Of a stretch of 64,000 bases of DNA, positions 958 through 37,808 are shown in pieces (the first letter of the stretch is position 1; every line of letters starts with the position of its first letter). The DNA is taken from contig CM074808.1 in the NCBI GenBank assembly GCA_037447605.1, forward strand, positions 1 through 64,000, in the 5' to 3' direction. Below the pieces are notes generated by a model. It did no database searches and was not told where the DNA came from. It worked only from the letters and a program-made list of their open reading frames with translations. A program made the translations under genes and the position numbers. The DNA is from Zygnema circumcarinatum SAG 698-1b (lineage: Eukaryota; Plantae; Zygnematophyceae).

Positions 958-3900
958 CTAGCACAGAAAGTCGACGGCCCCCGGCAGAACGTCCACGGCC
1001 AGGGGCAAGTGGCCCAAAAACTCCCCATCGGCCTCCACCTCTATCGTGGATGGCCCCATAGATGGGTCTCCCACCTCCAACCTCGCCACTCTGCCACGGC
1101 AAAGCAATCGCCAAATATGGATCTCGTGAGCAGGCCATGGAACCGAATGTGACGGACATGGTTATGTTCCCCTGAACCGAGAAACAATCTTGCACATCCT
1201 CAAACCACTACTCGGTCCCCCAGCCCCAACCCCCCTTTCCTCTCCCGAGCTGTAAACCTCCTGCTATGCATCCCGCAACGACCATAGGTGCAGGCCAGAG
1301 GCTCTCGAGCAAGCGAATGCATGGCCATGGAGGCCCCTGCCAGTTGCAGGACCGACGGGACGACAGTGCAGAAGGAGCCAACCTTCTGTGAGTTACGCGC
1401 TTGAGGTTATAATGGCTCCCCGCGAAAAGGTGCCATCCCTTAAGGATGAAGTCGAGGAGTTTGAATCCGATGAGGGTCACTATCTGCATGGGTGCATGCG
1501 ATGAAGCAGTCAAAGGCGGGGCCTGCCGCATGCATACGAGTTTTGTAAACTGAAAATGAAGGGTGTCCGCCACATCGAGGCATTCATCAATCGCCTTCCC
1601 TTCATCCTTCCCTTCCAGATCCAGTTGTCGTCTACTCTAGCTTGCTCTAGTTAGAAGGGGCTTGTTTTTGGAAATGACTCCTTGAAAGGGGATTTTGCCT
1701 CAAATGATGCCCAAGAATCGGCTAGGCATATAGAACCTCGCATCCAGTTTCCCGGAAAAGGGATCTGCAGTAGGGGCAATTTTCATGCCACCTCCAAAGT
1801 AGGCACCGTTTGCGACCACAAGGGCTGACATGGCCTTCACAAGGACCCCCTGCTCCTCATCCACCTGCAGCCCAGCGCAGCCACAAGAGCTGTCACAACG
1901 GCAGCCATGGCGGATGGCTCGCCCGCAACCAACGCTAACAGAGCAGCAGGCAGCGCACCCTTAGAATGACGTCACGGTTGACGTGCTGCAGGAACGCCAA
2001 CACCGCGCCCACAACGTAGCACAGAGGACCAAGGAATTTGAACTTACTGGCCACCTGGCCAGTGCGCGCACTCCTGCAAACTCCAAAAGACCGTCCTCCA
2101 CTCGTAACTACAGAGACGTGCAATTATGTAGACATACATTCGGCTCCCCTTGTCATGAAGAAGCCCGGTCTTGGTCTCCTACCACACATCCCAATGCCTA
2201 TCGCCCTACGCTAGAAGGAAAAAGTAAGGGAACCTATGTCTGGGTGGTGTGATGCTCACAGGTGCATGTCCAGTACGTTGACAAACATGCGAGCCGCATT
2301 CAGGCCAGCGCAACGAGCCCGTCCAGTCGCTTCGTCTTTCCTGCAGTTCCATGACCAGAGAGGGATACAACCTGTTCATCCAAAACGGCTCAAGAACTGT
2401 AAACCTCGACAAGAACGGTTGCTCACCCCCCGTTCCTGCGGCAGTTCCCATAACCTTTGTGAATCGATACACCACAGGTTAGGCCTATGATGCTGTCAAA
2501 AGGCAGCAATAATCGTCAGCATTCTCAGATTACAGTAACACGAACGTGAGAGTTTGGCTTTCGAGTGAGGCAGCAGACCTCTGCTGATGCGTTCCACAGC
2601 GCCCTTGACGTCGTTACTCTTCCTGCACACCATGGCAGTCCACGTCGGAGGATGTTCTGCTCATTGCTCATTGTTGGCATGCTGGCCAGCACCTGACGAA
2701 TGGGTAACATCAGAGTTCACACGCCACCGCTGATAACCAGAGCAAAACATGGAAGGGACATCACAATCTTCCAGTGAGGCATGCGCAAACAGATGGGGTT
2801 GGGAGTGCAAAGTAACATAAGGTTCTGTCCACAGAAATAGAAAACTGCGCTATAAACATACTCAGGTTAGTAAACATCCATGCCAAATGCGCGCCATTCT
2901 AATGTGAGGAATCAAGTTTGTTCTCTGCCAGAGTCACAAACACCTCGAGCTTCCAAATTCCAAACGATTTTGAAACCGCAGACTCTAACAAACAAATGTA
3001 CTTACCAGCCGAAGGTTCGAGGAAAGTCGCAGCCGGTCCCCAATGGAATGAGCTGCCACAATGACCCCAGAAAAAGGGAATGTTAGCATACTGAATGCAC
3101 TCTCGCACAGTAGCCTGACACTGGACTGCCTTATCAGACTTTGCATAGCGCTACCGTTCAGACGTAATAAACGGCAAACAATCGCAGCATAACTGCACGG
3201 CAATGTTTGAAATCATCACCGAAGAGGATGAGAGAGCAGAACTGGGAAATTCTCCATTTTATTTTTTTTTTTTTTGGCGGGCTTCCTAGAAGCTCACCCC
3301 ACAGGCCGTGCGTACACCATCTCCTTCGCCCCCAGAAGGCGCCACAGGCTCGCCATCCAAAAAAAAGCCGTTTACAATCTGCAGGAAACCCAAACTAATC
3401 CAGAACGTTAGATTCTCATGGACAGTGTAGCTGGCTTACAATGCTCATGCACGCCACTCTCTCTAGCAAAGGCAATGCTAGCTTCATACAAACTCAAATT
3501 CAAGGTACAAAGCAGCAAGCAGCAATGTTTTTCTTCAATCAAGCTCTTGAGTGCACCTTATTTAGGGTCCCGTCTCCTCCAACCGCCACAACTGCATGCG
3601 CTCGGTCCATCACCGCCTGCAATATGAGGCAGGCTTCCCATCAACAAGGAAAAACCACACCAATAGCTGCTAGCAGGAGAATTCAACAATTGCTAAAAAA
3701 TCTCTAACTGACAAAACATGAGCGTGAATTCAGATGCTTATGGGTGCAAACAAGCATTCGTAAGAGTGGCAGGTATTTAGCACTAAATCGAAACAGAATC
3801 TCTGCAAAAGTGCTCACAACAAAAATTGGTTTGGAGAACTCCCCAATCCTAACATTTGGTACTTGCTAGGGTTCACATATTGTGCGATTACCGAAGCTCA

Positions 3901-4835
3901 CCTTCCGCGCCATTTCCGTTGCATCCTTTTCGTGCCGAGTGAACTGCTCCACCACCTGCGCATCTCCGAAAGCTGACGGTGCGTCTTGAATATAATGTAT
4001 GCTTCACAGGTTTTCTATTTTCCAAATGCACTCAAGATCACTAATTTAGCCATAGCAAAACACTGACGGTGGTTTCCCATCAGTAGGAATCCCTAACGAT
4101 GACGAAAACAGGGATGTAAAGAATGGATTTTTAAGGTCAACAACAACAACAACGACGAACCAGAGCGAGCAATCGGCGACGTTGAAATAATAGTATCTCA
4201 CATTGCAGTCGTTTCCCAGAGCCTTCTTCAGCAATGGAACAATCTTTTTCCACTGGCGTGCAGCCCGACCATTCGCACCTGTCGAGGGAGAGAGAACGAG
4301 TGAGAACGAGAGAGAGGGAGAGAGTGCGTGGGGAGGTATAACCGCAACAGCAACATACGCAGATGCGAAGTAGGACAACTTTTTCAACATCCGGAAACGT
4401 GCATTGATTTATGCCAGATGTGAAAATATGTCGACAAAAGAATCTACAAATATTGAACAGAAAAATACAGCGTGTAAACATGCCATCCTTCGCTATCAAC
4501 CTCTCCAGTAAAACAAAAAAAAACGAGCTTTACAACGTGGCTCATTGCTCAGCACAAACCAACAACAAAGTTTCTAAGGTAAGAGACTATACATTGCATT
4601 GATAAATAATTACAGTATGCGTCAATGTAAATACGGCTAGCTTTTGACACACAGCTATGGAGAAATGCCTAGTTCATGACCCGAAGAGCCATAAACGAGT
4701 GGGCGCCATGGCAGGCGGGCGCACTGGCGGGGTTGATGATGACGACGTAGTCCCGCCCCCCGCGCGGCGCCGCCTCCTCCAGCCCCCGCTCCCGCCCCCG
4801 AGCGCCGCCGCAGCCGCCATGGCCGCCATGGCCAT
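958..4835 (-). CDS. LCBK2: Sphingoid long-chain base kinase 2-like / DAGK catalytic (YegS-like) lipid kinase, multi-exon
   Basis: Spliced exons translate to RDYVVIINPAS|ANGRAARQWKKIVPLLKKALGNDCN|VVEQFTRHEKDATEMARK|AVMDRAHAVVAVGGDGTLNK|IVNGFFLDGEP...|LIPLGTGCDFPRTFGW|...MFVNVLDMHL|SARTGQVASKFKFLGPLCYVVGA...|...NGAYFGGGMKIAP...|...EADGEFLGHLPLAVDVLPGAVDFLC*. These are colinear with the recalled Arabidopsis At2g46090 protein and carry the GGDGT and PxGT motifs. The start is uncertain, and two apparent 1-nt frameshifts are present (see findings). Confidence 0.88.
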
Positions 4836-9874: not shown

Positions 9875-12800
9875 TCAGGCCGAGCCTCTCAGAAGCTTCC
9901 GCAGAAGAGAGTAGCCGGGCGCGGAGGCGAGCACCTCCACCGGCCCGAGTTGACTCACATAAGGCGTCTCGGCGAGGATCAGAGTTGAGGAGATTCTGCA
10001 CAGTTGAAGGGTTTTAAGGGGTTCAAGATGATGTAGGTCCTAGAAATTTGAGTGGGGAGTTTGTATCTCCATTCTCAAGCATACGTTTGAACAGATCCAC
10101 AGGCTTAATGCTTATTAGAGATGTTAGGGTCATCAAAGCTTGGGCTTCACAAAAAGGCATTGTGTATTTTCAAGCTTTTTCGGGTTTTTGACATTCAGAT
10201 TTCGAGAGTTTTTGGTCGATTTGAAGTTCGAAGTTCTATAAGGTTTGGGTCTTCTGAGCTTCCATCCATGGCAAATCCTCCAGCACTTGCACAATCGAAC
10301 GTGAAGGCAGGCACATGCAAGGGAGGTGGTAGGAGAGAAAACAGAGGAAATAGGAGGGGAGAAAGGGAGAGAGAGACACACCTTCCTTCAGCTATTTGGA
10401 GAGCCTGAAGGGCTTTGGCTACCGACTCCACGAATGCCACCGGACACCTGAAGAGGACCAACAGAGAAGTATATAATTGAACTTCTAAACAAAACAGTAG
10501 ATGCAGATCCAGATCATCCAGAGTATATTTGACTCGCACAAACATACAAGTGGGAAAGTTGCAAAACAGGAGAATGAAAAAATAAAGGACACAGCGAGCA
10601 TGAAAGAGAGAGACACAGAATGAGAGAGTGAGAGATTGAGAGAGCAAGCGAGGGAAAGAGAGAGAGAGAAAGAGTCCAGTGTTGTGCATCCACACCGAGA
10701 ATAGAACACTGCACTGGGCATCCGTGTCCCAACCATCAGGAGCGCCTCCTCAGGCCTCTGCAGCCCAGCTCCCCAGTCCTGCATTCAGAAGCCTGGCAAG
10801 ACACTCCCCATCCTTCCTCTCTCTTCGATTCCCGACCAACTCGTCCTTTCATTCCCGTCACTCCGTCCCTCGTCCCGCTACATTTTTTCGCCCAACTCCA
10901 TTCTCTTTCCTCTCATTCCCTCTACCTCTTGCCCTCTTGTCGACCCAAGTTTTCCCACCCTCTCCCTCTACATCTTTCTCCCAACTCATCTCCCATCCTT
11001 CTCTACTATTTTCCTCACTAACTCCCCATTGGCACACTTTTCCTTTTCCCTGCATCCCCACTACCCCTAACCCCCCTCTGTCTTCCTCACCCAATCCTTT
11101 TCCCTCGTTCTACCTTCTCTTGCCTGACTCCTGTCGCCAACCTTTCCCTCCACCCACCTCGTCTCCACACCATTCCCAACCCTCGTTTCTTTCTCCTTTC
11201 CCTCGTTACTACTGTCCTTTTCCCCTCCCAATCCTCCCTGATCCGTACCCCTATCCCCCTCTCCCTCACCCTGAGCTGTGCGGCCAGCAGCGCGAGGCGC
11301 CTGACGGGCTCCTGCAGCGCGGCGTCCCAGCAGGCGCAGAGCGGGCACAGGAGCAGCGCTACCAGCACCACCGTGGCGCCCGCGTGAACCACCCACAGCG
11401 GCAGCAGGGCGCGCGGCCCCGCACCCGCCCTCTCCCTCTCCCTCTCCCTCTCCCTCTCCCTCTCCCTCTCCCTCTCCCCCGCCGCCGCCCCCTTCTCCGC
11501 CTCCGTCCTTCCGGCGCGCCGCGCGCTCACTGTCACCTGCGACGCGCCCAAAACAGATTTGTGAGTGGGGGGCCACGCGCACACGTGCCTGAGTGAGTTT
11601 GTGTAAGTATATACGTGAAAGAGTGAGAGAGTGAGCGAGAATGGACCTGCAGGAGAGAGGCATGAGAGATAGCGAATTCTGCTGTCCGCGTAGCGAGCAT
11701 GCCGGCTGCACCCAGCACGAGGAGGCCCCGGATGTGCAGCATTCGCTGGGTCACCAAAGCGACAACCTCCCTCACCTGCACTTGCATAACCGTAACACAC
11801 TGAAAGCCTAAATCCCCAAGAACAAAATTTCCATACTCGATTATCCTCGGACCTTCTGGAAAGCGAAGATAAATAAAAAGATACCCTCCATGCAGAAACA
11901 ACTGACCCCTGAATACTCTACAACCTCCTTGACATCCCGACACCTCCACTCTACAGCATGAACCGCGGAAAGCGCGCCTCTATTACAAGGCGAGCACGCA
12001 CTTTGGGATCGGACGAGGAGGCGAGCAGCGCCGGCAGCTGCCACAGCAGGCCGGCGAGGACCTGGTACGCGGCGGCGGCGGTCAGGGAGCCGTCGCGACC
12101 GCGCCGAAGCTCGGCGGCGGTCAGGAGGGCGAGGGGAGCGGCCAGGGGGAGGTAGTACGAGGGCAGCTGCAGAAGACGCGGAGGGAGAGGAGAAAGAGGG
12201 AGAAGACGAGGGGAGGAAGGGAGGCGAGAGGGAGAGAGAAACATAGAGAGGCACAATGGGAGAAGGAGAACGGCAAAAAAATGGTTGGTGAAGGAAAAGT
12301 AAACGAGGCACTGATGGATCATACGAGACGAGAAGAGTGGGAGAGAGAGGCGAGACGGGAGGAGGGGGGGCGGAAGGGGGATAAAAGAAAGAGAAATCGG
12401 ACTGACAGTGGGACAAAGAGGGAGAGAAAGGAGAGAGAGGCGCATAGGGAGTCGGGCGTCTCGAGCTCCCGTACCTGAGATGCTGAAAGTGCAAAAAAAG
12501 CGAAGGTGCAAAGCAGCCACACAGTCGCCAACAATGGCAGGCGCCCCTCCCTGGGCTGCTGCCTCCACCAGAGGACGCGCTCCCAGTTGAACGGAACAGA
12601 ACGGAACAGTGCGGATGGTAGAACTAGCGACCATGGAAAGTACGCGAGCACAACTACCACGAGTCCATAAAACCAAGGTCTGCCTCCATGGTGGTTAACT
12701 CCCTGCACGTATCTCTGCCAGCCGGAAAAAGGACGGAAAGGGGTGAGGAGACCAGGAACATCTCTCCTCCCACACTCCACTGTCTTCCCTCTGTGTCTCA

Positions 12801-15800
12801 CCTCGTCACCTACCCTACATATCTCCACTCTCTCGACCCACACTCTCGCGTCAGATACGCCCTAACAGTGTTTCCTATCTTTCGTCTCGTGAACTCCCCA
12901 TTCTCTCTCACTCCTGCAACTTCCAGCAAAATCCCTGCCCTCTCTGCCTCTCTCTGCTTTCTCAGGCTCTCCTCTCTCACATTCCGAATAGAGTCCTTTC
13001 TTGCTGTTGAAAACAACTCAGATTCTTCTCCCTCCTCCCTCTTCCCTCCTTCCTTCCCTCCCTGCCACTCTCTCTCTCCTCTCTCCCTCTCCCTCCCTCC
13101 CTCTTGCATCGCGAGCGCACCTCAAAGTTGTGGTATCCAAAGAACGTGGCTGTGTAGGCTGTTCCGTGGCGCCGGTGCATGACGCAAAACCACGGAGCCG
13201 CCAGGGCCGCCACCGATGCCAGCCAGCACAGTGCCCGGCCTCTGCTCTCCTCTCCCTCCAACCCATTGTACACACACTAAATTCAATTCTCAAGAAGCAG
13301 AATAGAACGGAACGGAATAGATTCAGCGGAACAGAAGGAAACAAGATGAAACTGAGCAGGAAAAAGATAGAAACAGAGTGGAACAAAATGAAGCAAAACA
13401 TGCATCAATTTGTTTGCATTTCTGGAAAGAGCACAAAGGAACTGTGGCTTGTAAGCTGCATTCAAGCAAAACGTGCTGATTCGCCCCTCGAAACTCTAAA
13501 ACGTGGACAATATTAAAGCCCCCAAGTTTCCTAAAAGCTTCCATAACGACCATACAATGTCAACGTCTAGACATCCTAACATGACTTAGAACCCGGAATG
13601 GCTCAAAGCCTTCCAGCTAAATCCCCGAAACCCCTCAAACCCTGACCCTTACAATTCTCTCCAGCATCTCCAAGTCAGAGGAAGTGGCTCACACGGCAAT
13701 CCGGTGCAGCTCTCCCGTGCAGAGCAGAAATACCGCCCAGATCCCAACCTGCCCTCTCCGCGCGCTTCAGCTCCTCCTCACAAACATCGAGCCCCTCCCT
13801 GCCCTCACAATTCTAGAATCCCTGGTGGAATCCCAGAAAGCTTACAAACACCCTACTAAAATCTTAAAAGCCCAAAGAACATTGGAAGAAGTCGCCAGAA
13901 ACCCTAACTGCAACCCCTACAAACGTAAAGGAGTCACTAGTTCCACCATTTGGTTATTTGTTCTCTTTTGTCCCTCTGGATTCATGGGAGGGAATGAGAA
14001 CGAGAGACTCACAGGCAGCACAAAGCCCACCGGACCCTTAGACAACACCGCACACGCAGTGAAAAGTGCTGCCAGCGGGGCCCCCCACAGCGCCCCCCCC
14101 GCGTAGCTCCAAAACAGGGCCAGCAGCGCTCCTCCCACAGCGGCCGCGAGGGCCATGTCACTCACGGCAGCGCTGCCCCACACCACCACCTGCACGCGGG
14201 GCTTTCGGACTTCAGGGTTTGCAGGGAGGTTTTGCTCTTAAGGCCTTAGGGCCTTCAGACTTTTCGCAGTTTGACAACGTCCTTAAGGACATTCAACAAT
14301 TTCGAAGGTTTCAGGGATTTTAAGGCCTGGGTATAGGCATCAGTATAACTTTGTCCACTCTTCAACCATGAACAGCAGGTGGAGCACATTACAGCCAGAT
14401 TGAGGCAGAAGGCTGCTGAAGCTGCCAGTGCAGTTGCCCAGCGACGTCCCACTTCGCTCTCCTCCTCATCCTCCTTGCTAGCCTCCATCTTCTCCGCTCC
14501 TGCTTCCCCTTCCTCTTTTCTCCCTCCTGTTGCAGCAGCACTTCGCTCTTCATTCAAATAACGAGGTAGGGATATTGAGAACTTTGCTGCTGTGGCCAAT
14601 AGCGCCGTAGCCAGAAGAGTAGCACACAGTGCAGAGGGCAATCGAGCGGCCCATACATCAACTCCGAAAAGGTGCATCTGAGGATGTAGCCATGGACGAA
14701 AAGCTGGCTTAGAGACGACGATTAAGAGCGGTGTTCACTCGGATGAATGGTATGCCAAACCCTAAAACACCTTCTCGTCATTGCAAATCCAGATAGCCTA
14801 CAAGCCCTGAAAACCCGGAACTCCTAAAAAAGACTCCCTCCGAGACCCAACAACCCTCGAACGTCAGCTTGCTAACTTTCTGGAAGCCATAAAACTCCCC
14901 TTCGGATTTCCTGGATTTTGCAAGTTAATGGACGTACACTCGCCGCCATGAGGTAGTACACAAGCGGCGGCTTGTCGAAGCGCGGCATTCCGTTGAATTG
15001 CGGAGTCACAAAATCTCCTGTCACGAGCCTGACCAACGCTGTCACTTTTTTTTATCAGAACGGACGGAAGAGGTGAGGGAAGTGCTTTCACTCGGGTTGA
15101 ACTGATTTTAGTTTGAAGTGATTTTTTTAATTGAATCGATGTCATCAACATTGAACGAGCAGTAATAGAGAAACCCTTCACCCTTCAATTTTTTCAACGA
15201 ACCCGGAACCTACGACCTCTAGAGTTGCAAGGGGCTCAGCGCGGATGCACATTTGGCGCGCGGCCTCGACGAAGAGCGGCTCCGTGTCGTCCACGAGGCC
15301 GGCCGCCCGCCCCAGCAGCCCCCATGCTGACGTGGCAAGAACGCCCAGCCACGCAGCAGCCACAGCCCAGCGCTGCCACGTGCGCAGGCCTGCCAGCTCA
15401 GCCTCCACGTCAGCAAACGGCAGAGCCCGATGAAACGCAACCGCCACCCGCCGCTGCGCCGCTCTCTCTCCCTCTCCCTCTCCCTCTCTCTCTCCCTCTG
15501 CGTCTTCCAATCGATGGCTAACCTTCTCTGCCTCTGCTTTTCTTTGCCTCTCCCTACGCCTCTGTCTCGCCGTCTCCTTTTTCACCCCATTCTCGCCCTC
15601 TATGCTCCATCCCCCCTCGGAAGCTGCTGAGCATGTCACTCCTCCGCGGCTCTGAGGGTTCCTTCGCAGACGACGTGCTCCGGCATGCGAGAGTAAAGGA
15701 GAAAGCGGTTGATTTTGGCAGCCTCCGGACTTAGAATCTATCGGAATTTCAAGGGTTCCAATGTTTTTGGAGCGTTTTGAGGTTGCAGAAGTGTACAGCC

Positions 15801-15909
15801 TACACTCTTTGGCTGAAGGCCTCCCACGTGCAGCAAGCAGGGGTCCAGCTGACGCGCGTAAGACGGAGGTGGAAAAGCGGGGCGCAGGAGGGGAGGACGC
15901 GAGCGCCAT
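9875..15909 (-). CDS. ArnT/PMT-2-like (GT83/GT39, GT-C fold) polytopic glycosyltransferase of cyanobacterial type, with N-terminal plastid-type transit peptide; about 11 coding exons
   Basis: Exons give GLVDDTEPLFVEAARQM|LVTGDFVTPQFNGMPRFDKPPLVYYLMAA|..FGVDVWAARLPSA..|..WGSAAVSDMAL..AVLSKGPVGFVLP|..APWF..TFFGYHNFE|RYVQGVNHHGGRPWFY..YFPWS..|LPSYYLPL..|..DAALQEPVRRLA..|..LMVGTRMPSAVFYSR|..ILAE..*. This is the motif order of cyanobacterial ArnT-like proteins as I recall it. The leader MALASSPPAPRFSTSVLRAS...GGVTCSA is S/T/R/A-rich. Confidence 0.85.
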
Positions 15910-16074
15910 GGCTTCGCACGCATTCCGGGGCCCAGGAGGCGAGTCGGGAGGGCCTTTGCTTCTTTCCTTCCGGGGGGGGCGAAGCACAAGCGAGCGAGCG
16001 TAGCCGTGGCAAGAGGCGAGGCTGCGCGCGCTCATTGTCTCGCGGGCGGGCGGACGGGCGGGCGACTCGGCCTG

Positions 16075-16144
16075 CGACCGACTGACCGACTGACTGACCG
16101 ACCGACTGACCTACTGACCGACTGACTTGACTGACTGACTGACT
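16075..16144. repeat. (GACT/GACC)n tetranucleotide array, probably in a 5'UTR intron of the ArnT-like gene
   Basis: cgaccgactgaccgactgactgacc... On the minus strand it ends in the acceptor-like gtcgcag. Confidence 0.75.
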
Positions 16145-16493
16145 GGAGCAGGCTGGCACAAACGCTGGGCACAAACGACCCAACAACGCGACGAGCTGAC
16201 AGCCGCGGCAAGTTGCCCACCCACCCACCCAGAGCGGCCGGCCGGCCGGCCCTGAGGGGAAATCAATTCGCGCCTTCCTTCCGGGGCCGCCTCCTCTCCC
16301 TCTTCTCTCTCCTTTCCTCTTTGTGGAAATTGTTTCGAACCATTGGTTGGCAGCCTTTGGATGCGTCCAATGGTTGACAACCATTGCCACTACAGGAGTT
16401 GGTATGAGTCATAAGTAGCGCCTGCAAGCATTGGCTTGCAGCGGTTGGCAGCCCTTTGCGTTCCGCACAGCGCCGCGGGGAAGATATTTTGCA

Positions 16494-16518
16494 GTACGGA
16501 CGTCCGTACCTTCGTACA
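16494..16518. promoter_or_regulatory. 16-bp perfect palindrome GTACGGACGTCCGTAC plus TTCGTACA (SBP/SPL-type GTAC sites)
   Basis: Exact sequence, about 110 bp upstream of the phosphorylase ATG in the divergent ArnT/phosphorylase intergenic region. Confidence 0.5.
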
Positions 16519-16616
16519 GACGTCCTGCCTGCGGGGGCCGTCCGTCCGTCCGTCCGCGCGGGGGAGAGAGACACGCGAGGCGACGCAATCAGCAGTCGGA
16601 CGAGGGGGCCCGTGCC

Positions 16617-19600
16617 ATGGCGTCCATGGCGGCCTGCACGCGCTGCCTTCCCTCCGCCGGCCCCTCGACTCGCCTCCTCCCTGCGCTTTCTCCCCGCCCG
16701 ATCGCATGGCGGACCCCCAGGCGCCGTTCTGCCCCTCTGGGAATGCGATCTGGCGGTGGCGAACGCGGCGCGGGGCCGATCCGCGCGGTGCAGCAGCAGC
16801 GGCGCGCGCCGGCGCAGGCGGTGCCGGCGGAGGTGGTGGCGGAGAACGAGAGCAGCGAGCAGTACACGGTGTTGCGCGTGACGGCGGTCAACCGGCCGGG
16901 GCTCCTGCAGCTGATCACGTCCACGTTCCGCGACCTGGGGCTGGACGTGGGGCGCGCGTCCGTGGAGCTGGACGAGGCGGGGCGCGTGCAAGACCAGTTC
17001 TTCGTGACGGATGCGGCAGGGGGGAAGGTGACGGACGTCGAGGCGCTGCGCCACATCTGCCGCTGCCTGGAGGCCGTACTCGACCAGGACGCGCGCCCGC
17101 ACGCGCAGGCGGCCCGCGGGCAGGGGCAGCAGCAGCAGCAGCAGGTCGGGCGGCCCGTCACCTTCCAGCCCGACCGCGCTTCGCTCTCCCTGGTGGATTT
17201 GGACGCCTCGCCGCAGCAGCGGCGGCGCACGGAGCTGCTGTACGGCCTGATGGACGGGTACATCCGCAACGACGTGCTCGCCATCCAGCAGAGCATCCTC
17301 GACCACGTCGAGTACACCGTCGCGCGCTCGCGCTACAAGTTTGACGACTTCGAGGCCTACCAGGTGCCCCCCGTCTGCTTCTTTCCGTGCTTGAAGCGGA
17401 TCGACCCGCGCTGCAATGCTGCCTCCGGGTCGGGCCGCATTCGTCGCCCTGTCGTTGCATCGCCCGTGTCAACAATGGCGTGGTGATGGGTCGTGCCGCA
17501 TCCCCGTCCACTTGTTGGTCATGCACAAGTTGCATCGTGCCAAGAACTTGGGCGGGTGCCAATTCCCTCCCCTGAACCCATTGTTGCTCCTTGTCTTGCG
17601 TGGATCGCTTGTTGCGCTGCAACCACTATTTTCGCATTTACGTTGTTTCCAGTCTCATTTAAATCCTTGATTGCTCCTATGTGCGGCATCAAATGTCTTT
17701 TCGTGCAAAAGGCTGATTTTCCATGTTTAGTTTTGGTCGCTTCCGTTAAAAAATGTCAAGCTTTGGTTTTGGATTATGTGTAAGCTTGGGGGGGGGTTCA
17801 GAATTTTAACGTAAAGCATTGTGGATCCATTAAACCAAGCGGCCGCATCGTGGATCGATGCAGGGGACTGCCTACAGCGTGCGCGATCGGTTGATTGAGA
17901 GCTGGAATGACACGCAGCAGTACTTCAAGGATCAGGATCCGAAACGAGTATACTATCTCTCCATGGAGTTTTTAATGGGTGAGAATCTCGATTTTTTCCT
18001 CTAAACCCCCAGAATATGGAGATTTATCGACTATGCTAACATAAGCAGTGGAATGTTTGGTACGAGGCCGAGTTGTTAACCAAAAGAGGTGGAGATCATG
18101 AATCGCTTAGTGCATTTTAAGTGCGTAGGGCTTTAGTTTCAGACGCCCGAAACACTTCATTAGCTATCTACAAATTTTAAATATCAGTTTTTTGTAATTT
18201 TACAAAGCCTTTAGAAACCCTGTAAATGATTCGAAACTCTAAAGGCTTGTTTTCTTATAACTGTAGATTACATTCTAAGGTCCTTCGACTGAAGGTCCCC
18301 AGACACCCATGATTTGAACCGGGAACGTATTTTTCTGCAGGAAGGTCCCTACTTAACAGCATTTTCAATCTGGGAGTGAGGGATCAGTACATAGAGGCAC
18401 TGCAGCAGCTGGGATATGAGCTGGAGGTGCTGGCTGAGCAGGTGAGATCAGTTCTTCAGTGCTCTCCTACTCTCGCCCTTTTTGACTTTCTGAACTCTTG
18501 AACTTCTGAACTTTTGTGTACGGTGGAAGAAACACTTACAATTTATCATTACTAGGTTGCTGGAGAAGTAGACAGAAACCTGGAAGCGAAGATTAACAAG
18601 GTGATGTGGACCACTTGTTACTTAGTAGAAGATCCTGAGGGAAGGGGAGGGGTTGTGGTATCAGGAAAGAGATGCTGCTCTGGGAAATGGCGGCCTTGGA
18701 AGGTAGTAATTGGTCCACCAGCCCCCCCCCTTCTCTTTCTCTCTTTTCTCTCTCTCTCACTCTCCCCGTCTCCTTCGTCTTTTTCTCTCTCTCCCTTCCC
18801 GTTTGATCATTCCAGCTTTTTTGCTGGTTAACGTGCAAAGGGATACACGTACTTGACTAGATTGAGGGGCATGAATGTGCATCTCCCATGTGCGCTGTGT
18901 ACCCGCTAATTCAAATGCCCCTTTGAAGGGCCTCCGACAGGTCTCGGGTCGGAAGTTCAGCCCTCACTTTTGCCTGCACGTACTCTTCTGAAGTGTGAAA
19001 GGGACGGCTGGGTGCAGATTGGCTGCGTGCTTCCTGGACAGTATGGCGTCACTAAACTACCCGGGCTGGGGGTGAGGGCATAGCGCTGCTCTCCTAGCCT
19101 CACTCCCCATTGCCTCTTCACTGTCTCACCCTCTTCCCCTCTCCTTCTCATTTTCCTTCCGTCCTCCCTCTATCCTTCACTTCCCTCTCCCACTTCCATT
19201 CCCACTCCCTATCTTCTCTCTTCTCCCCTATCTGCCTGTCCTTGGCTTCTCCTTTTCCCCTCGTTTTCCCTCTCACTTTCGCGCTCTCCTCTCTCGATCT
19301 TTCCCTGTCCTCCCCCTTTCTCTCCATCGTCCGCTTCCCAACACTCTCTCGCGTTCCTGTTTGTTGTCTCCATACTTCTTCCCCTTCCTGTCAGGCTTCA
19401 ACTCGATTTTGCTCCTTCAATCCTGGCTCCCCCAGCCTTCTCTATCTCTTCCTTTCGTATTAGATCTCGTCAGCGCCTGAGGATCTGAAAGCTCGCCGGC
19501 CCATATTCCTGACGTGTATCCTCTGTCTCTGGCAGGTACGGAATCCGGTACCAGTACGGCATGTTCCGGCAAACCCTCCGCGATGGCTTTCAGCACGAGC

Positions 19601-25947: not shown

Positions 25948-28900
25948 CTACTCGGAGTCGGAGAGCGCCGCGTCTATGAGTTGGCGCGTCTCCTGCTGGT
26001 GGATGCGGTGGCTGCCGGTGGCGGCGGCCGCGGAGGACGCTCTGCCCACATAGCGAGCGCGGCTCCGCTCCGGCCCGCGATCCTTGCACAGCTCGCGCAG
26101 CGCCGTCTCCAGGCGGGGCTGCACGTAGCTCCAGGCGCCCATGTTCTTCGGTTCCTCCTGCAAGCGGCCCGCAGCACTGTGAGGGGAGGGACAGGAAAGG
26201 GAAGCCGTTTCACGATTCACTCGATTCAGCGCAACCCTAAACTGTCAAAACGACGAGCGCTGACAGAGCTCTAACCTGCACCCACACGATCTCGGCGTTG
26301 GGGTAGCGCTTGATGACAGTCGCCAAGCGGTCCATTGCCAGAGGGGCGATCTGCTCCAGGCGGACCAGCGCGACGTTTCTGATCTTCCTAGCTCGCCGAG
26401 CATGCGCGAGAAGATAATAAATCTGCACGCAGCAGTTCATGTCCACATGAAAAGAAGGGAGCAATTTAACAAGGACGCCAATGGCCTCGTTGCAATTGAC
26501 CTCGGCTGAACAATGTTCTACGACAGTAACGATATTGCGAGCATTGCTCACCACGACCTCTAACAACCCGGAAAAATGAAAATTCTTCTCGTAACCAAGC
26601 AAACGCTGAAATACCTAGGGCTTCGGAGAAACCCTGCAAATCCCCAGGAGATCCCTGACTATATCGTCGACGTTCTGAAGGTTGGCGTGAGTGGACAGCA
26701 CCTTCCCCGAGCAGAGGAGCACGCGCTGAATGTCCCGCCGGGGCAGAAGGTCCTCCCCCAGATGCCGCAGATTGTCAGCCGGGTCCCCGTCTGCAATCAC
26801 CCGCCTGATGCCCCCCTGCATACAACTGCTTCAACCGACCAAAAGCACTGGAAACCCTAATGCAGTTGTACGTACATGACTATTCATCGCTTACACATTT
26901 AAATCCAAAGAGAAGTAGCCTACAGTTTCGCTCAGCAGAGCAGAGGACAAAGCAAGAATCCTGCAAAAAGGCACAAACCTGAAGTATGTGCCTGGAGCCA
27001 TGTCTGCCAGTTTAGAGACACAGGCCCTGTGATGCAACAGAAACTACAGGAAAGCCCACAGCCAAACCCTTCTCTCCGCAGCCCATTAGCAACAAAAATC
27101 GTGAAAGTCAGAAGCTGAAATCCAGGGATTACTCTTCCCGACCCCTCCCCCCCTTTCAAACCCCACGTTCCTGCAATCAGAAAATCTGCAATCTTTTCAA
27201 GAACCTTCATCAGCACCTAAGACCCCAACCTCATCTGCTCAGAGTAGTAAAAGCGACGCGGCGACACGGGCTGCAATACGAGCAGGCTGTGGAGGCAGCA
27301 AGCCTCCGGAGTGCACCTTTGGAGCCATGACGACCAGCGGCTTCGAGTACGGCCGGCAGACCTGCATGCATAGGGCGATTCCCTTCATCATTATCATCAT
27401 CGCCGTCATCACTATCACCACCATCATCATCATCGCCATCGCCCCGTGAGCACACCTGGCGGCGCAAGAGGTGAAAGAAGTTCGCGGGCGATGTCACGTT
27501 CACCACACAGCTGCAACGCAGTAAAGCTACAGCATTCTGTCAATAAAGCTTCAAAAAAGCTCTACAACCAGAATAGTGAAAGGTAGCAATGTGAAGTTCG
27601 ACTTAAAGCACAGGTTGTCTAATCCTTTATGACACAGAGAGGGAAAAAGGGTTCTGTCTTGTCTCTGGAAGCTCAAAAAATATAAAATAAAAAAGAACCT
27701 ACAGGTTGTGATCTTTTTCTGCATTTCTGCGCATCCACTGCGCCATGAAGAGCTTCCAGTCGTGCCTGCAGAAGGAAGACTGGGCAGGTCAGGCCTCCCC
27801 TCTGTCGCTCTTCAGAGCTGACATCTTAAAAAAAACCCCTACAAGGCCATAAAAACCTCAAACGCATAAACCATGAAGTAACCCAAACAACACCATGAAC
27901 ACATCACATCCAAACAGAAACAGCAAGCACGTAAACCCGATACACCCTGCAGACCCTAGAGAGTTTCCCCTCGCCCTGAAGCAGCTGCACAAGTCCCGCC
28001 CCCCCCCACCGGTGCAGGCGGCCCTCCGGCCCGCCGTCGAGTTCTGCGAGGAGGCGGGTGAGGTCCGGCGGGTCCCCCTCCTGCGCGCCCTCCGCCGCCC
28101 GCCGCGCCGCCGTCAGCTCCTCGAGGTCGCTCCGCGTCAGATAGCCCTTGCCGCCTGGGGGAGGAGGGAGGGAGAGGGGCCAAGAGAGATGGGAGAAAAA
28201 GATATGGGAGGAGCTAGAGAGGGGGGGGCGAAAGGGAGGAGGGAAGGAGGGGAGGAGAGAGCGGGAAACGAAGACAGCAGAGTGGGTTAAAGAGAAAAAG
28301 GGAAGCGCGAGGGAGGTGGCGAGCTGAAGAGTGGCGGAGTTCAGCATGGGCACGAGACGGGGAAGGGAGCATGGCCTGAAAGCTCTCGAATCCTGCCAAG
28401 ACTTTAGAACCCTATGCAGGGACATGAGTGAAGAGAAGAGAATGACAGGACGAGCAAGGACGGAGAGCGAAGGAAGATAGAGAGGGAATGATCTCCGCAC
28501 CTCTATCAGCCGCAGTAAAGCCGGCCTCAATGTCAGCCGTGTGTTGGGGCCCCAGCCCGGGGAGGTGGTCGGGGTCATCACTGCAGAGCTGCACACACCA
28601 CCGCGTGCGTGCGCGCATGGGCCCTTTGGACAACAGTTTTTCGGGGTTGAAAGGTTGGTTTGAGGATTGCGGGGTACCTGCAGGAACCTCTCGAGTCTCG
28701 CGGAGCTGTGGTCCGGCCCCTGCCCGTCGTGCCCGTGCGGCAGCAGCAGCACGAGCCCGCAGGCCGCCCGCCACCGCGCCTCGCCGCCCGCCACGAAGGT
28801 GTCGATGGCCGCCTGCGCGTTGTTCGCGAAGTCGCCGAACTGCATCATCGGAAGGAGACAGGGGGGGGGAGGGAGGAAGGACTAGTTGTGGGGCAGCAGG

Positions 28901-33236: not shown

Positions 33237-33445
33237 AGAGGGAGAAATGAGAAAAAAGAGCTAAACCGAATTCCGAAACAGATAGAAAGCAAGGTAGAAG
33301 GAAAGCTGGACCAGCGGGCGACCAAACGGTACCTGACTAGTCATAAATTATTTCATGGCAGAAGCACAAGAGCTCACATGCCAGAACTGGCACGGACGAA
33401 TGCACACGCTCATTCGAGTGTGTCTGTGTGCGTGTGTGTGTCTGC

Positions 33446-33497
<52 letters not shown>

Positions 33498-36447: not shown

Positions 36448-36683
36448 GCTGCCTGCCTGCCTTCCCGCTCCCTCCCTCCCGCTCGCCCGCGCGGCTCTAG
36501 CGCGAAGGGCGGGGCTAGCCGTTAGGAGGTCGGCAGGGCACGGCAATACGATATGGGAATCGCGATATTGTCTCGTATCGTGCGTATCGGTCCGCTCAGC
36601 GTGCGCGCTTTTGGTTGGTTGTGAAGTGGATGGCGTCGCGAGCGAGCAGCGCGGGTTCCTACCTGTGTCGGCTTCACCTGGCG

Positions 36684-36765
36684 GGCAGGCACGAGGCAGG
36701 CACGAGGCAGGCACGAGGCAGGCACGAGGCAGGCACGCAGGCAGGCACGCAGGCAGGCAGCCAGC
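36684..36765. repeat. Short tandem repeat (GGCACGAGGCA)x4 plus (GGCACGCAGGCA)x2 upstream of OGDH
   Basis: Seen directly. Confidence 0.85.
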
Positions 36766-37808
36766 CCTCAAAGAGTGATGCAGCCTACATCACAGCAGTA
36801 ATAAAATCCAAACTCACGTCCGTTCCATGCCATAGTCACCACAGTTTGCAGACCAGCGACGGAAGCAACTCACTTCACCTCCGCTCACTCCGCCGTTTTG
36901 CTCGCAATGTCGCTTGGCCTTGCGCCAGAGTCGCCAGCTTTGTCTAGAGGACATAGTCAGGGACAGGGGTCAACAATTATTCCCCTGCCTTGAGTTGGCA
37001 GAGAACCAAGGGCAGTTACACTAGCTCAGAGAATAGCTCCACACGCAAAAAAATCCCGCAGCATCAACGGTCCAGCGGCTATTTAATTCAAGTTAATTCT
37101 TTTCGCCACGAAAAACAGTGTAGACAATATTCCTTTAGACAGGTTCTACTATACTTGTCTCGTTTTTTTGGCTTTTGCAATCAGACCACTTGGCCCCATT
37201 TTGACCGCTCGTCCAAACTTGGAGCACCCACCTTGAGACTACTTTGCGGGAGGCAGCCAACGAGTGGCACTCCTCACTTAGACAACCGCATCATACGTCA
37301 ATTTCACCTTCCCATATCCAACAGTTTTGCGTCTGTCTACAAGACTGATCCTGAAAAATGAACTCTAAAACAACAGCATAACATAGCTAAGTCTACAGCT
37401 TTAGAAAAAATCTTTTTATCAATTTTTTTAAAACCAGGCTGACCGCCAGCCCACGTTGTCATGAGTGGTGAGGCCCATCAAATCTGATTACGGCACTGCT
37501 ACAACTCTTGTGCGTAACAATATAACTTGCCCTCCTATTTACAAAGTTGGCATAATGCCTCCCTGTACTCCTGGAGCATCCAGCGGCTCCCGACAGCATG
37601 CCCTCCCTCTGCTGGAGGCTCGGCGGATGCCTGCAACCCCCTCCTCCCCGACCAGAGCAGCCTAAACCCCTTCTAAAGTGCACTCCTTCGGCCACGTCCA
37701 GGCGGGGGCTTTGCAAGGCCTCGCAGATCCACCTCACTTTCCTGCCACTTCCAGAATTCTGCAAGTATCCACGGGAGTGGAGATTTTTGCAAAAAGCATT
37801 CCCACAAT

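What the first reader, a model, noticed from the sequence alone, without database searches (positions are those of the whole stretch)
9875..15909. Intron-rich nuclear gene for a cyanobacterial-type ArnT-like GT-C glycosyltransferase with a plastid transit peptide
Seen: a full-length polytopic protein retaining the family's conserved motifs (DxxE in loop 1 DDTEPLF, FDKPP, RLPS, SDM, LSKGPVG, HN...HH..PWFY, LPSY), fused to an S/R/A-rich leader ending in VTC/SA and split by canonical introns, so it is not a bacterial contaminant. Established: ArnT-family enzymes transfer sugars from polyprenyl-phosphate donors to envelope lipids (lipid A) or proteins; plastids derive from cyanobacteria; streptophyte algae and mosses retain plastid peptidoglycan synthesis that uses a polyprenyl carrier. 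I know of no characterised plant or algal plastid ArnT-like enzyme. Inference: an endosymbiont-derived, lipid-linked-sugar glycosylation pathway of the plastid envelope (glycolipid, peptidoglycan or protein modification). This is the best candidate for an undescribed system in this window.
Basis: partly seen in the sequence, partly recalled or inferred. Interest (0 to 1): 0.8.

Follow-up and report, generated by a model that had tools for sequence, protein, structure and literature searches.

The report
Cyanobacterial-type ArnT-like glycosyltransferase gene in a plant genome
This is a real, 13-exon nuclear gene for a membrane sugar-transferase whose only close relatives outside green algae and bryophytes are in cyanobacteria; the family was already noticed in moss and is annotated in databases, but no study of its function turned up, so a role in the chloroplast remains an inference.

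Summary
On the minus strand, 15909..9875, thirteen exons joined by twelve GT-AG introns give an uninterrupted 781-codon ORF. It is 60% identical to, and colinear with, an 808-aa transcript-derived protein (P0001).

Ten of the twelve introns sit at the same alignment column and phase as in the Physcomitrium and Calypogeia orthologues. This rules out bacterial contamination.

The family matches Pfam PMT_2. A confident AlphaFold model of the orthologue matches ArnT best (TM 0.71/0.81). The residues that bind polyprenyl phosphate and sugar in ArnT are conserved. It scores far below the ArnT equivalog cutoff, so it is ArnT-like but not ArnT.

Eukaryotic members occur in mosses, a leafy liverwort, all streptophyte algal classes sampled, and one marine picoeukaryote. 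They form one clan (100/100) that is sister to, not nested within, an exclusively cyanobacterial family.

All eukaryotic members carry a 55-200 residue N-terminal extension. In the window it is rich in Ser, Thr, Ala and Arg. Plastid targeting, the donor sugar and the acceptor were not tested.

The presence of GT83 in moss was reported in 2013. I found no functional study. This is a new member of a known, uncharacterised family, of moderate interest.

The parts
15251..15909 (-). Exon 1 (659 nt). Holds ATG 15909, the N-terminal extension of about 180 residues, TM1 and the start of loop 1 (GLVDDTEPLFVEAARQ). Donor is AAT|GTGCAT.
15910..16035 (-). Possible 5' extension of the CDS. An in-frame ATG at 16035 (MSARS...) would add 42 residues. 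Which start is used was not resolved.
14938..15028 (-). Exon 2 (91 nt): LVTGDFVTPQFNGMPRFDKPPLVYYLMAAS. D238/K239 correspond to ArnT E84/K85. It is the same size as exon 2 in moss and liverwort.
14393..14677 (-). Exon 3 (285 nt): the RLPS helix, then a variable acidic loop.
14013..14189 (-). Exon 4 (177 nt): SDM (D356, corresponds to ArnT D158) and LSKGPVG (K396, corresponds to ArnT K203).
13693..13748 (-). Exon 5 (56 nt, same size as in moss and liverwort).
13121..13241 (-). Exon 6 (121 nt): ends in FFGYHNFE.
12475..12714 (-). Exon 7 (240 nt): RYVQGVNHHGGRPWFY... R464 corresponds to ArnT R270. This exon alone matches ArnT 5EZM with E=0.011.
12002..12166 (-). Exon 8 (165 nt): LPSYYLPLA. Y547 corresponds to ArnT Y345.
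11647..11775 (-). Exon 9 (129 nt). The intron that follows is specific to the window's gene; it is absent from the moss and liverwort genes.
11270..11443 (-). Exon 10 (174 nt). Its 5' boundary is uncertain because the acceptor lies inside the CCCTCT microsatellite at 11428-11478.
10696..10757 (-). Exon 11 (62 nt, same size as in moss and liverwort): start of the C-terminal soluble domain (EALLMVGTRMPSAVFYS).
10382..10447 (-). Exon 12 (66 nt).
9875..9995 (-). Exon 13 (121 nt, includes the stop codon at 9877-9875).
16036..16616 (.). Intergenic region shared with a divergently oriented gene (ACT domain, then a phosphorylase-like start from 16617 on the + strand). It contains a GACT-type tandem repeat at 16075-16145. 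Probably a bidirectional promoter and 5'UTR region (inference).

Best explanation
This is a nuclear, vertically inherited streptophyte gene. It encodes a polytopic GT-C glycosyltransferase with the ArnT fold, made of about 13 transmembrane helices and a C-terminal soluble alpha/beta domain. It belongs to an orthologous group otherwise found only in cyanobacteria.

By analogy with ArnT, the enzyme most likely takes a monosaccharide from a polyprenyl-phosphate-sugar donor. It would transfer the sugar to an acceptor on the non-cytoplasmic face of its membrane. The N-terminal extension of about 160-200 residues most likely acts as an organelle-import signal. The enzyme would then sit in the plastid inner envelope or thylakoid membrane, with its active site facing the intermembrane space or lumen.

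Shown here: gene structure, homology, fold, conservation of the catalytic and donor-binding residues, and phyletic distribution.

Inferred, not tested: plastid location, type of donor, and acceptor (an envelope lipid, peptidoglycan or its lipid-linked precursor, or a protein).
For: Gene model:
- 13 exons, 12 GT-AG introns and an intact 781-codon ORF.
- 10 of 12 introns share column and phase with the Physcomitrium and Calypogeia genes. An eleventh lies within 1-3 columns.

Expression of the family:
- The closest orthologue, P0001, is an uninterrupted 808-aa ORF on 2.9-kb contigs from two sequencing runs, so it is spliced mRNA.
- Trinity and MMETSP transcripts exist for other members.

Family and fold:
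- Pfam PMT_2 above the gathering score for orthologues.
- phmmer against PDB finds ArnT 5EZM at E=2e-21.
- The AF2 model has pLDDT 91.6 and pTM 0.92.
- The best fold match is ArnT, E=4e-18, TM 0.71/0.81. OST, ALG and PMT reach TM 0.47 at most.

Active site:
- WIN keeps all 28 invariant family columns.
- D238/K239, D356, K396, R464 and Y547 align with ArnT E84/K85, D158, K203, R270 and Y345.

Origin:
- After the eukaryotes, the named hits in the top 120 of two searches of 5.8 billion proteins are all cyanobacterial; the rest carry no source name.
- Every taxon-named locus among the best 80 of 490 relatives across 185,579 prokaryotic species is cyanobacterial; a few are titled only 'uncultured bacterium'.
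- Eukaryotes form one clan, 100/100.

N-terminal extension:
- The loop-1 motif starts at residue 41-51 in cyanobacteria and at 99-246 in eukaryotes.
- In WIN the first 34 residues lack acidic residues and are rich in Ser, Thr, Ala and Arg. There is no hydrophobic signal-peptide core.
Against: - No targeting predictor or localisation data were available, and the extension is not conserved in sequence between species. A mitochondrial, dual or other location is not excluded.
- The position aligned with the ArnT catalytic Asp55 is Thr209. An Asp lies two residues upstream (D207, nearly invariant in the family), so the loop-1 geometry may differ.
- The family scores only 81-129 bits against the ArnT equivalog model, whose cutoff is 567. 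Substrate cannot be carried over from ArnT.
- Cyanobacterial gene neighbourhoods give no donor or acceptor clue. There is no conserved ArnC/GtrB-like GT2 or flippase nearby.
- The eukaryotic clan is sister to the sampled cyanobacteria, not nested within them.
- Transcription of the window's own copy was not shown.
Confidence: 0.6

Rival explanations
1. The locus is bacterial (cyanobacterial) contamination of the assembly, or a very recent transfer, rather than a resident nuclear gene.
For: The nearest non-eukaryotic relatives are cyanobacterial.
Against: - There are twelve spliceosomal GT-AG introns. Ten are at positions and phases shared with moss and liverwort orthologues.
- Coding GC is 63% against 49% in introns.
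- The flanking genes are eukaryotic and split by introns.
- The eukaryotic sequences form their own clan, 100/100.
Confidence: 0.01
2. It is an ER or secretory-pathway GT-C enzyme (PMT, TMTC or PIG/ALG-like). It would use dolichyl-phosphate sugars to glycosylate secretory proteins or GPI anchors, not a plastid enzyme.
For: - Pfam names the domain 'dolichyl-phosphate-mannose-protein mannosyltransferase' (PMT_2).
- UniProt calls the Chara protein 'mannosyltransferase'.
- Localisation was not tested.
Against: - No PF02366 (PMT) hit and no MIR or TPR domain in the eukaryotic members.
- Fold matches to PMT, ALG, OST and PIG enzymes are far weaker than to ArnT: TM 0.26-0.47 against 0.71-0.81.
- The N-terminus has no signal-peptide-like hydrophobic core.
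- All close relatives are cyanobacterial, and all identified eukaryotic hosts are green algae or plants.
Confidence: 0.12
3. The gene entered the green lineage by horizontal transfer from a cyanobacterium, unrelated to the plastid endosymbiosis. Earlier authors assumed this for moss GT83. Its location and role need not be plastidial.
For: - Ulvskov et al. 2013 favoured HGT for the occurrence of GT83 in moss and red algae.
- No glaucophyte or red-algal member was among the top hits.
- The distribution is patchy: no Marchantia, Selaginella, fern or seed-plant hit in the top 120.
- The eukaryotic clan is not nested in any sampled cyanobacterial subclade.
Against: - There is a single eukaryotic clan that also holds a marine picoeukaryote besides the streptophytes. 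This points to one old acquisition, at or before the base of Streptophyta.
- A sister position to the sampled cyanobacteria is what an endosymbiont-derived gene would also show, if the donor lineage is deep or unsampled.
- All members have N-terminal extensions.
Confidence: 0.3
4. The enzyme is mitochondrial or dual-targeted and decorates lipid A-like molecules made by the plant Lpx pathway. It would be a true functional analogue of ArnT or RgtD.
For: - The ArnT fold and donor-site residues are conserved.
- UniProt labels the domain 'RgtA/B/C/D-like'.
- From general knowledge, not tested here: plants keep LpxA-K and KdtA homologues.
Against: - The phyletic pattern does not follow the Lpx genes. 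To my knowledge these are kept in seed plants, whereas no seed-plant member of this family appeared.
- Scores are far below the ArnT equivalog cutoff.
- No arn or rgt-type neighbours occur in cyanobacteria.
Confidence: 0.1

Closest known systems
[quoted passage not shown]
   Same: - Same GT-C fold, with about 13 TM helices and a C-terminal soluble domain. It is the best structural match, TM 0.71/0.81.
- Significant sequence homology, E=2e-21.
- Equivalents of E84/K85, D158-K203, R270 and Y345 are conserved.
   Different: - About 18% identity.
- 81-129 bits against the 567-bit cutoff of the equivalog model.
- Thr sits at the position aligned with D55.
- No arnBCADEF-type neighbours in cyanobacterial relatives (compare the E. 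coli operon).
- The eukaryotic copies are nuclear, intron-bearing genes with N-terminal extensions.
- The acceptor is unknown.
Cyanobacterial 'ArnT family / glycosyltransferase family 39' proteins (e.g. P0102 Leptothermofonsia, P0156 Leptolyngbya NIES-3755)
   Same: - 38-42% identity over more than 500 residues, with the same length of core.
- Shared family-specific motifs F[AV]EAARQM and RFDKPPL[IV]Y.
- Sister clade in trees.
   Different: - The cyanobacterial proteins lack the N-terminal extension and lack introns.
- They are themselves uncharacterised. No functional paper was found.
Physcomitrium patens LOC112279176 (XP_024369131.1, UniProt A0A2K1L0W3); probably the 'P. patens GT83' mentioned by Ulvskov et al. 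2013, though that link was not verified
   Same: It is the orthologue: 44% identity, 10-11 shared intron positions and the same domain architecture.
   Different: - It comes from a different lineage. The window's gene pairs with P0001 (100/100), not with mosses.
- The window's gene has one extra intron.
- The moss gene is annotated only as uncharacterised.
Eukaryotic protein O-mannosyltransferases (PMT1/2/4, GT39) and TMTC1-4
   Same: The GT-C superfamily, the shared Pfam clan (PMT_2) and the use of polyprenyl (dolichyl)-phosphate sugar donors.
   Different: - No PF02366 hit, no MIR and no TPR domains.
- Weak structural match, TM 0.26-0.42.
- These are ER enzymes of opisthokonts, whereas this family's kin are cyanobacterial.

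Membership tests
GT-C superfamily, ArnT/PMT_2-like (Pfam PF13231; CAZy GT83/GT39 clan) | Significant match to the PMT_2 profile above the gathering score | tested here: met
   Orthologues P0001, P0002, P0006, P0008, P0010 and cyanobacterial P0012, P0013 score 28-38 bits against a cutoff of 26.1. Isolated window exons are too short and give no hit. The spliced window protein could not be submitted by reference.
GT-C superfamily, ArnT/PMT_2-like (Pfam PF13231; CAZy GT83/GT39 clan) | Polytopic fold of about 13 TM helices with a C-terminal soluble domain, superposable on a solved GT-C structure | tested here: met
   AF2 model of the orthologue P0001:190-808: pLDDT 91.6, pTM 0.92. Foldseek finds ArnT 5F15 at E=4e-18, TM 0.71/0.81. 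This was tested on the 60%-identical orthologue, not on the window protein itself.
GT-C superfamily, ArnT/PMT_2-like (Pfam PF13231; CAZy GT83/GT39 clan) | Acidic D-E/D-D motif in the first extracytoplasmic loop (ArnT D55/E56) | tested here: inconclusive
   E210 aligns with E56, but T209 aligns with D55. D207/D208 lie two and one residues upstream, and D207 is nearly invariant in the family. A residue-level structural superposition was not available.
GT-C superfamily, ArnT/PMT_2-like (Pfam PF13231; CAZy GT83/GT39 clan) | Residues that contact the polyprenyl-phosphate and the sugar (ArnT K85, R270, Y345; D158-K203 pair) | tested here: met
   K239, R464, Y547, D356 and K396 are present in the window protein. 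They are invariant or nearly invariant across 70 family members. Their roles are taken from PMC7801869.
ArnT proper (lipid IVA/lipid A L-Ara4N transferase, NCBIfam NF009784 equivalog) | Score at or above the curated equivalog cutoff (567 bits) | tested here: not met
   81-129 bits for three streptophyte members, the marine eukaryote P0008 and two cyanobacterial members.
ArnT proper (lipid IVA/lipid A L-Ara4N transferase, NCBIfam NF009784 equivalog) | Genomic association with arnBCADEF-type donor synthesis and flippase genes | tested here: not met
   In 82 cyanobacterial loci the recurrent neighbours are a 190-aa membrane-anchored protein without a Pfam match, DUF565/Ycf20 and a P-loop kinase-like ORF. 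One locus has GT2 and sugar-nucleotide genes 4-6 kb away. The E. coli arn operon serves for contrast. This test does not apply to the eukaryotic locus.
Eukaryotic protein O-mannosyltransferase (GT39, PMT1/2/4) | PF02366 PMT domain with lumenal MIR domains and the C-terminal 4TMC module | tested here: not met
   The eukaryotic members match only PF13231. Fold matches to Pmt1/2/4 are weak, TM 0.26-0.42.
Nuclear-encoded plastid proteins of endosymbiotic origin | Cleavable N-terminal transit peptide and import into plastids | not testable with these tools
   Only indirect evidence exists. All eukaryotic members have a 55-200 residue extension relative to cyanobacteria. In WIN, residues 1-34 have no acidic residue and are rich in Ser, Thr, Ala and Arg. 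No predictor, proteome or localisation data were available.
Nuclear-encoded plastid proteins of endosymbiotic origin | Phylogenetic nesting within, or sisterhood to, cyanobacteria to the exclusion of other bacteria | tested here: met
   Every taxon-named prokaryotic relative retrieved is cyanobacterial; many others are unnamed. The eukaryotic clan, 100/100, is sister to the cyanobacterial clade. Nesting inside cyanobacteria was not seen, and the root rests on very long outgroup branches.

The most novel reading that the evidence does not exclude
Streptophyte algae and bryophytes retain a polyprenyl-phosphate-sugar-dependent glycosylation step from the cyanobacterial ancestor of plastids. It would act at the periplasm-equivalent face of a plastid membrane, either the intermembrane space or the thylakoid lumen. 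There it would decorate plastid peptidoglycan or its lipid-linked precursor, an envelope glycolipid, or a lumenal or intermembrane protein. No such organellar GT-C pathway has been described.
Probability: 0.35. Interest if true: 0.75.

Novelty: new member of a known kind. Interest (0 to 1): 0.5.

Why it matters
If the enzyme is plastid-located, it would be the first GT-C (lipid-linked-sugar) glycosyltransferase assigned to a plastid. It would point to a bacterial-type envelope or lumen glycoconjugate surviving in streptophyte algae and bryophytes. No hit came from annotated vascular plants. These are also the lineages that, from the literature, keep plastid peptidoglycan (for example PMC9434261, seen).

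It would also give a handle on the function of a widespread cyanobacterial family, with 490 species-level hits, for which I found no functional study. The question can be tested directly because Physcomitrium has a single orthologue, LOC112279176, that can be knocked out.

If the enzyme is not plastidial, this is simply one more uncharacterised gene of bacterial origin.

Tried and rejected
- **Pfam on single exon ORFs:** no hits. The exons are too short, so I used orthologues instead.
- **The spliced window protein:** it could not be handed to the search, fold or Pfam tools, because no reference exists for a spliced product. Structure and Pfam tests were therefore run on the 60%-identical orthologue P0001. 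The window protein was compared only in scripts.
- **Source organism:** not identified. Rfam and tRNA scans were empty. An exact-ORF look-up was blank. The SRA run ids of P0001 appear in no paper. The careful tree does not resolve where WIN+P0001 sits among streptophytes. The quick tree's 95* sisterhood to mosses plus liverwort did not hold up.
- **Tandem second GT-C gene:** it looked like a conserved partner in two cyanobacterial loci but occurs in only 3 of 82 loci, so I rejected it.
- **The 190-aa cyanobacterial upstream neighbour:** it is conserved in 30 of 82 loci but has no Pfam hit. The AF2 model is poor, pLDDT 67, and there is no PDB fold match. I did not search for plant homologues because the top-120 list would be filled with cyanobacteria.
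- **Outgroup rooting:** cyanobacterial paralogues first attached to the long Closterium branch, a long-branch artefact. After removing long rows and adding E. coli ArnT, the root fell between eukaryotes and cyanobacteria, but on branches longer than 8 substitutions per site. I treat the root as weak.
- **Intron mapping in algae:** in Klebsormidium, Chara and Closterium it was only approximate because the models are partial. I did not use it.
- **Harholt 2012:** the main text does not mention GT83.
- **Literature:** ten searches found no functional study of plant or cyanobacterial members.
- **Third protein-database search:** left unused, because no remaining question justified its cost.
Full report
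**1. The observation**

The finding places a gene at 9875-15909. ORF listing and three-frame translation of the minus strand show conserved peptide blocks scattered over three frames. A search with one block (exon 7) against 1.84 billion representative proteins returned 67 hits. The best, P0001 (808 aa), is 63% identical in that exon.

tblastn of P0001 against the window gives 13 colinear matches from 15579 down to 9890. For each of the 12 junctions I listed every GT/GC..AG pair that keeps the frame and scored the junction peptide against P0001. In every case the best solution is a canonical GT..AG intron of 203-512 nt.

The spliced CDS runs from ATG 15909 to the stop at 9877-9875. It has 781 codons and no internal stop. 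An in-frame ATG at 16035 would add 42 residues, and I could not decide which start is used. Coding GC is 63% (GC3 66%), against 49% in the introns. The acceptor of intron 9 lies in a CCCTCT microsatellite, so a few residues there are uncertain.

**2. A resident nuclear gene, not contamination**

I mapped the Physcomitrium (XP_024369131.1, locus L086) and Calypogeia (L088) proteins exactly onto their genes. Each has 12 exons. In a joint alignment:
- 10 of the window's 12 introns fall in the same column with the same phase as in both bryophytes.
- The last intron is within 1-3 columns, with the same phase.
- Intron 9 is specific to the window.
- Exons 2, 5 and 11 have identical lengths: 91, 56 and 62 nt.

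Gene structure shared across deep land-plant lineages excludes a bacterial contaminant or a recent transfer.

The nearest orthologue, P0001, is an uninterrupted ORF on 2.9-kb contigs assembled from two sequencing runs. For a gene with 11-12 introns in relatives, this means spliced mRNA, so the orthologue is transcribed. Trinity (Coleochaete) and MMETSP transcripts exist for other members. Transcription of the window's own copy was not tested.

**3. What the protein is**

- Orthologues match Pfam PMT_2 (PF13231) just above the gathering score.
- P0001 matches ArnT of Cupriavidus metallidurans (5EZM) with E=2e-21. Window exon 7 alone reaches E=0.011.
- An AlphaFold2 model of P0001:190-808, built with a 70-sequence alignment, has pLDDT 91.6 and pTM 0.92.
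- The best PDB match of that model is ArnT (5F15/5EZM), E=4e-18, TM 0.71/0.81. The next matches (OST STT3, ALG9/12, PglB/AglB, Emb, PMT) have TM of 0.47 or less normalised to the query.
- The window protein keeps all 28 invariant and 67 of 80 nearly invariant columns of the family alignment.

Residue roles in ArnT are summarised in PMC7801869. Using those roles, the correspondences are:

| ArnT | Window protein | Role in ArnT |
|---|---|---|
| E84/K85 | D238/K239 | K85 contacts the lipid-carrier phosphate; E84/K85 contact the metal |
| D158-K203 | D356-K396 | sugar and acceptor contacts |
| R270 | R464 | role not established in the source read |
| Y345 | Y547 | lies close to the donor phosphate |

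The one deviation is the loop-1 D55/E56 pair. E210 aligns with E56, but T209 aligns with D55, with Asp two residues upstream.

Against NCBIfam, the only hit is the ArnT equivalog model, at 81-129 bits where 567 are required. The protein therefore works like an ArnT-type GT-C enzyme but is not ArnT. It is also not a eukaryotic PMT. It has no PF02366, MIR or TPR domain, and its fold match to PMT is weak.

**4. Relatives and origin**

Two searches of the 5.8-billion-protein collection (queries P0001 and P0008) give the same picture.

The eukaryotic members found are:
- Mosses: Ceratodon, Physcomitrium and several Sphagnum species.
- A leafy liverwort: Calypogeia.
- Streptophyte algae: Chara, Coleochaete, Closterium, Mesotaenium, Spirogloea, Klebsormidium, Chlorokybus and Mesostigma.
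- One MMETSP transcript (P0008), with an 81%-identical relative (P0219).

P0219 is an intronless gene on an 8.5-kb marine contig, next to chlorophyllase and NFACT-R genes, so it comes from a marine picoeukaryote.

After these, every hit that carries a taxon name is cyanobacterial. No Marchantia, Selaginella, fern or seed-plant protein is in either top-120 list, although an orthologue would be expected to rank above the cyanobacterial hits.

A scan of one genome for each of 185,579 prokaryotic species, using family motifs, found 490 relatives. Every taxon-named locus among the best 80 is cyanobacterial, and a few are titled only 'uncultured bacterium'.

In a careful ML tree (LG+C20+F+G4, 40 rows) the 16 eukaryotic sequences form one side of a 100/100 branch. 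The window pairs with P0001 (100/100), and deeper streptophyte relations are unresolved. An earlier quick tree had suggested that the pair is sister to mosses plus liverwort (95*), but this was not upheld.

Rooted with E. coli ArnT and three cyanobacterial paralogues, eukaryotes (99*) and cyanobacteria (97*) are reciprocally monophyletic sisters. The outgroup branches are extremely long, and early-branching cyanobacteria were not sampled.

Cyanobacterial ancestry is therefore well supported. A single old acquisition is likely. Endosymbiotic versus horizontal transfer is not decided.

**5. Targeting**

The conserved loop-1 motif begins at residue 41-51 in cyanobacterial proteins. In the eukaryotic ones it begins at 99-246, and at 204 in the window protein. 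The window's leader starts MA. It has no acidic residue in its first 34 positions and is rich in Ser, Thr, Ala and Arg. It lacks a hydrophobic signal-peptide core, and a highly charged stretch follows it. This fits an organelle-import sequence. However, no predictor or localisation data could be used, and the leaders are not conserved between species. I rate plastid localisation as probable, about 0.6-0.7, not as shown.

If the bacterial topology is kept, the active site would face the intermembrane space (inner envelope) or the lumen (thylakoid).

**6. Clues to function from cyanobacteria**

In 82 cyanobacterial loci the recurrent neighbours are:
- a co-oriented upstream gene for a 190-aa protein, in 30 loci. 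It has an N-terminal membrane anchor, a Pro/Ala/Ser-rich linker and a strongly conserved domain of about 100 aa without a Pfam match;
- a divergent DUF565/Ycf20 gene, in 35 loci;
- a P-loop kinase-like ORF, in 31 loci.

A second GT-C gene follows in only 3 loci. No ArnC/GtrB-type GT2 or flippase is consistently linked. One locus has GT2 and sugar-nucleotide genes 4-6 kb away. The 190-aa protein gave only a weak model and no fold match. Donor sugar and acceptor therefore remain unknown.

**7. Prior knowledge**

Ulvskov et al. 2013 (PMC3797821) state that, to their knowledge, the only GT83 in Viridiplantae is in Physcomitrella. They also report GT83 in red algae and favour horizontal transfer. 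The orthologues are annotated in NCBI and UniProt as uncharacterised, or as 'Glycosyltransferase RgtA/B/C/D-like domain-containing protein'. Ten full-text searches found no functional or localisation study of a plant or cyanobacterial member.

**8. Verdict**

The sequence observation is correct. The family assignment and the cyanobacterial affinity are well supported. The gene is a new member, from a lineage not yet represented, of a known but uncharacterised family.

What is new here is the wider phyletic picture: all streptophyte algal classes sampled, mosses, a leafy liverwort and a marine picoeukaryote, with no hit among annotated vascular plants. Also new are the shared intron structure and the confident ArnT-like model with a conserved donor site.

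Interest is moderate (0.5).

Noticed in passing
window 16617-17483 (+): A divergently oriented neighbour begins about 580-700 bp from the glycosyltransferase start. Its first exon encodes an S/R/A-rich leader and an ACT domain (PF24931/PF01842). It then continues into a sequence that, from memory, resembles the N-terminus of alpha-glucan (starch) phosphorylase (...[24 protein letters not shown]). An ACT-phosphorylase fusion would be unusual. The phosphorylase part was not verified.
   Followed up: partly
window 27904-28848 and 35872-36771 (-): These look like pieces of a large multi-exon gene. One ORF matches Transket_pyr. Both resemble 2-oxoglutarate dehydrogenase E1, from memory of its motifs. 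The gene appears to span at least 9 kb.
   Followed up: no
window about 34.3-34.5 kb, and throughout: There is an assembly gap: a run of N gives XXXX in ORFs 33428-34579 and 33573-34691. Microsatellites are very frequent, of the types GA/CT, CA/GT, GCCT and GACT. Some lie inside coding sequence, such as the GEREGEGEGER stretch in exon 1 (15462-15499) and the acceptor of intron 9 (11428-11478).
   Followed up: partly
L007:5193-5765 (+) and 29 other cyanobacterial loci: A conserved cyanobacterial gene sits directly upstream of the GT-C gene in the same orientation, in 30 of 82 loci. It encodes a 190-aa protein with an N-terminal membrane anchor, a Pro/Ala/Ser-rich linker and a highly conserved C-terminal domain of about 100 aa (HWDF.P.EG...FAQDGSRRYWGPY). 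It has no Pfam match and no fold match. It could be a partner or a substrate of the transferase.
   Followed up: partly
L007:4694-5026 (-) and 3630-4688 (-), and about 30 other loci: A DUF565/Ycf20-family gene and a P-loop kinase-like ORF lie divergently upstream of the cyanobacterial orthologue in 31-35 of 82 loci. From memory, the kinase-like ORF resembles D-glycerate 3-kinase. To my knowledge, Ycf20 is itself a family shared by plastids and cyanobacteria.
   Followed up: no
L001:9827-11626, L002:9709-11277, L039:4414-6027: In three cyanobacteria a second, very divergent GT-C gene (PMT/PMT_2) follows the orthologue within a few bases. This suggests an occasional two-enzyme operon.
   Followed up: partly
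L085:551-2710: An intronless 719-aa family member (P0219) lies on a marine metagenome contig next to chlorophyllase and NFACT-R genes. It is 81% identical to an MMETSP transcript (P0008). The family therefore also exists in at least one marine picoeukaryote outside the known streptophytes, whose identity was not determined.
   Followed up: partly
P0071 (Mesostigma, 1308 aa) and P0016 (Closterium, 1127 aa): These two gene models are much longer than the 670-810 aa family norm. P0016 has a very long branch in the trees. They may be fusions or mis-annotations.
   Followed up: no
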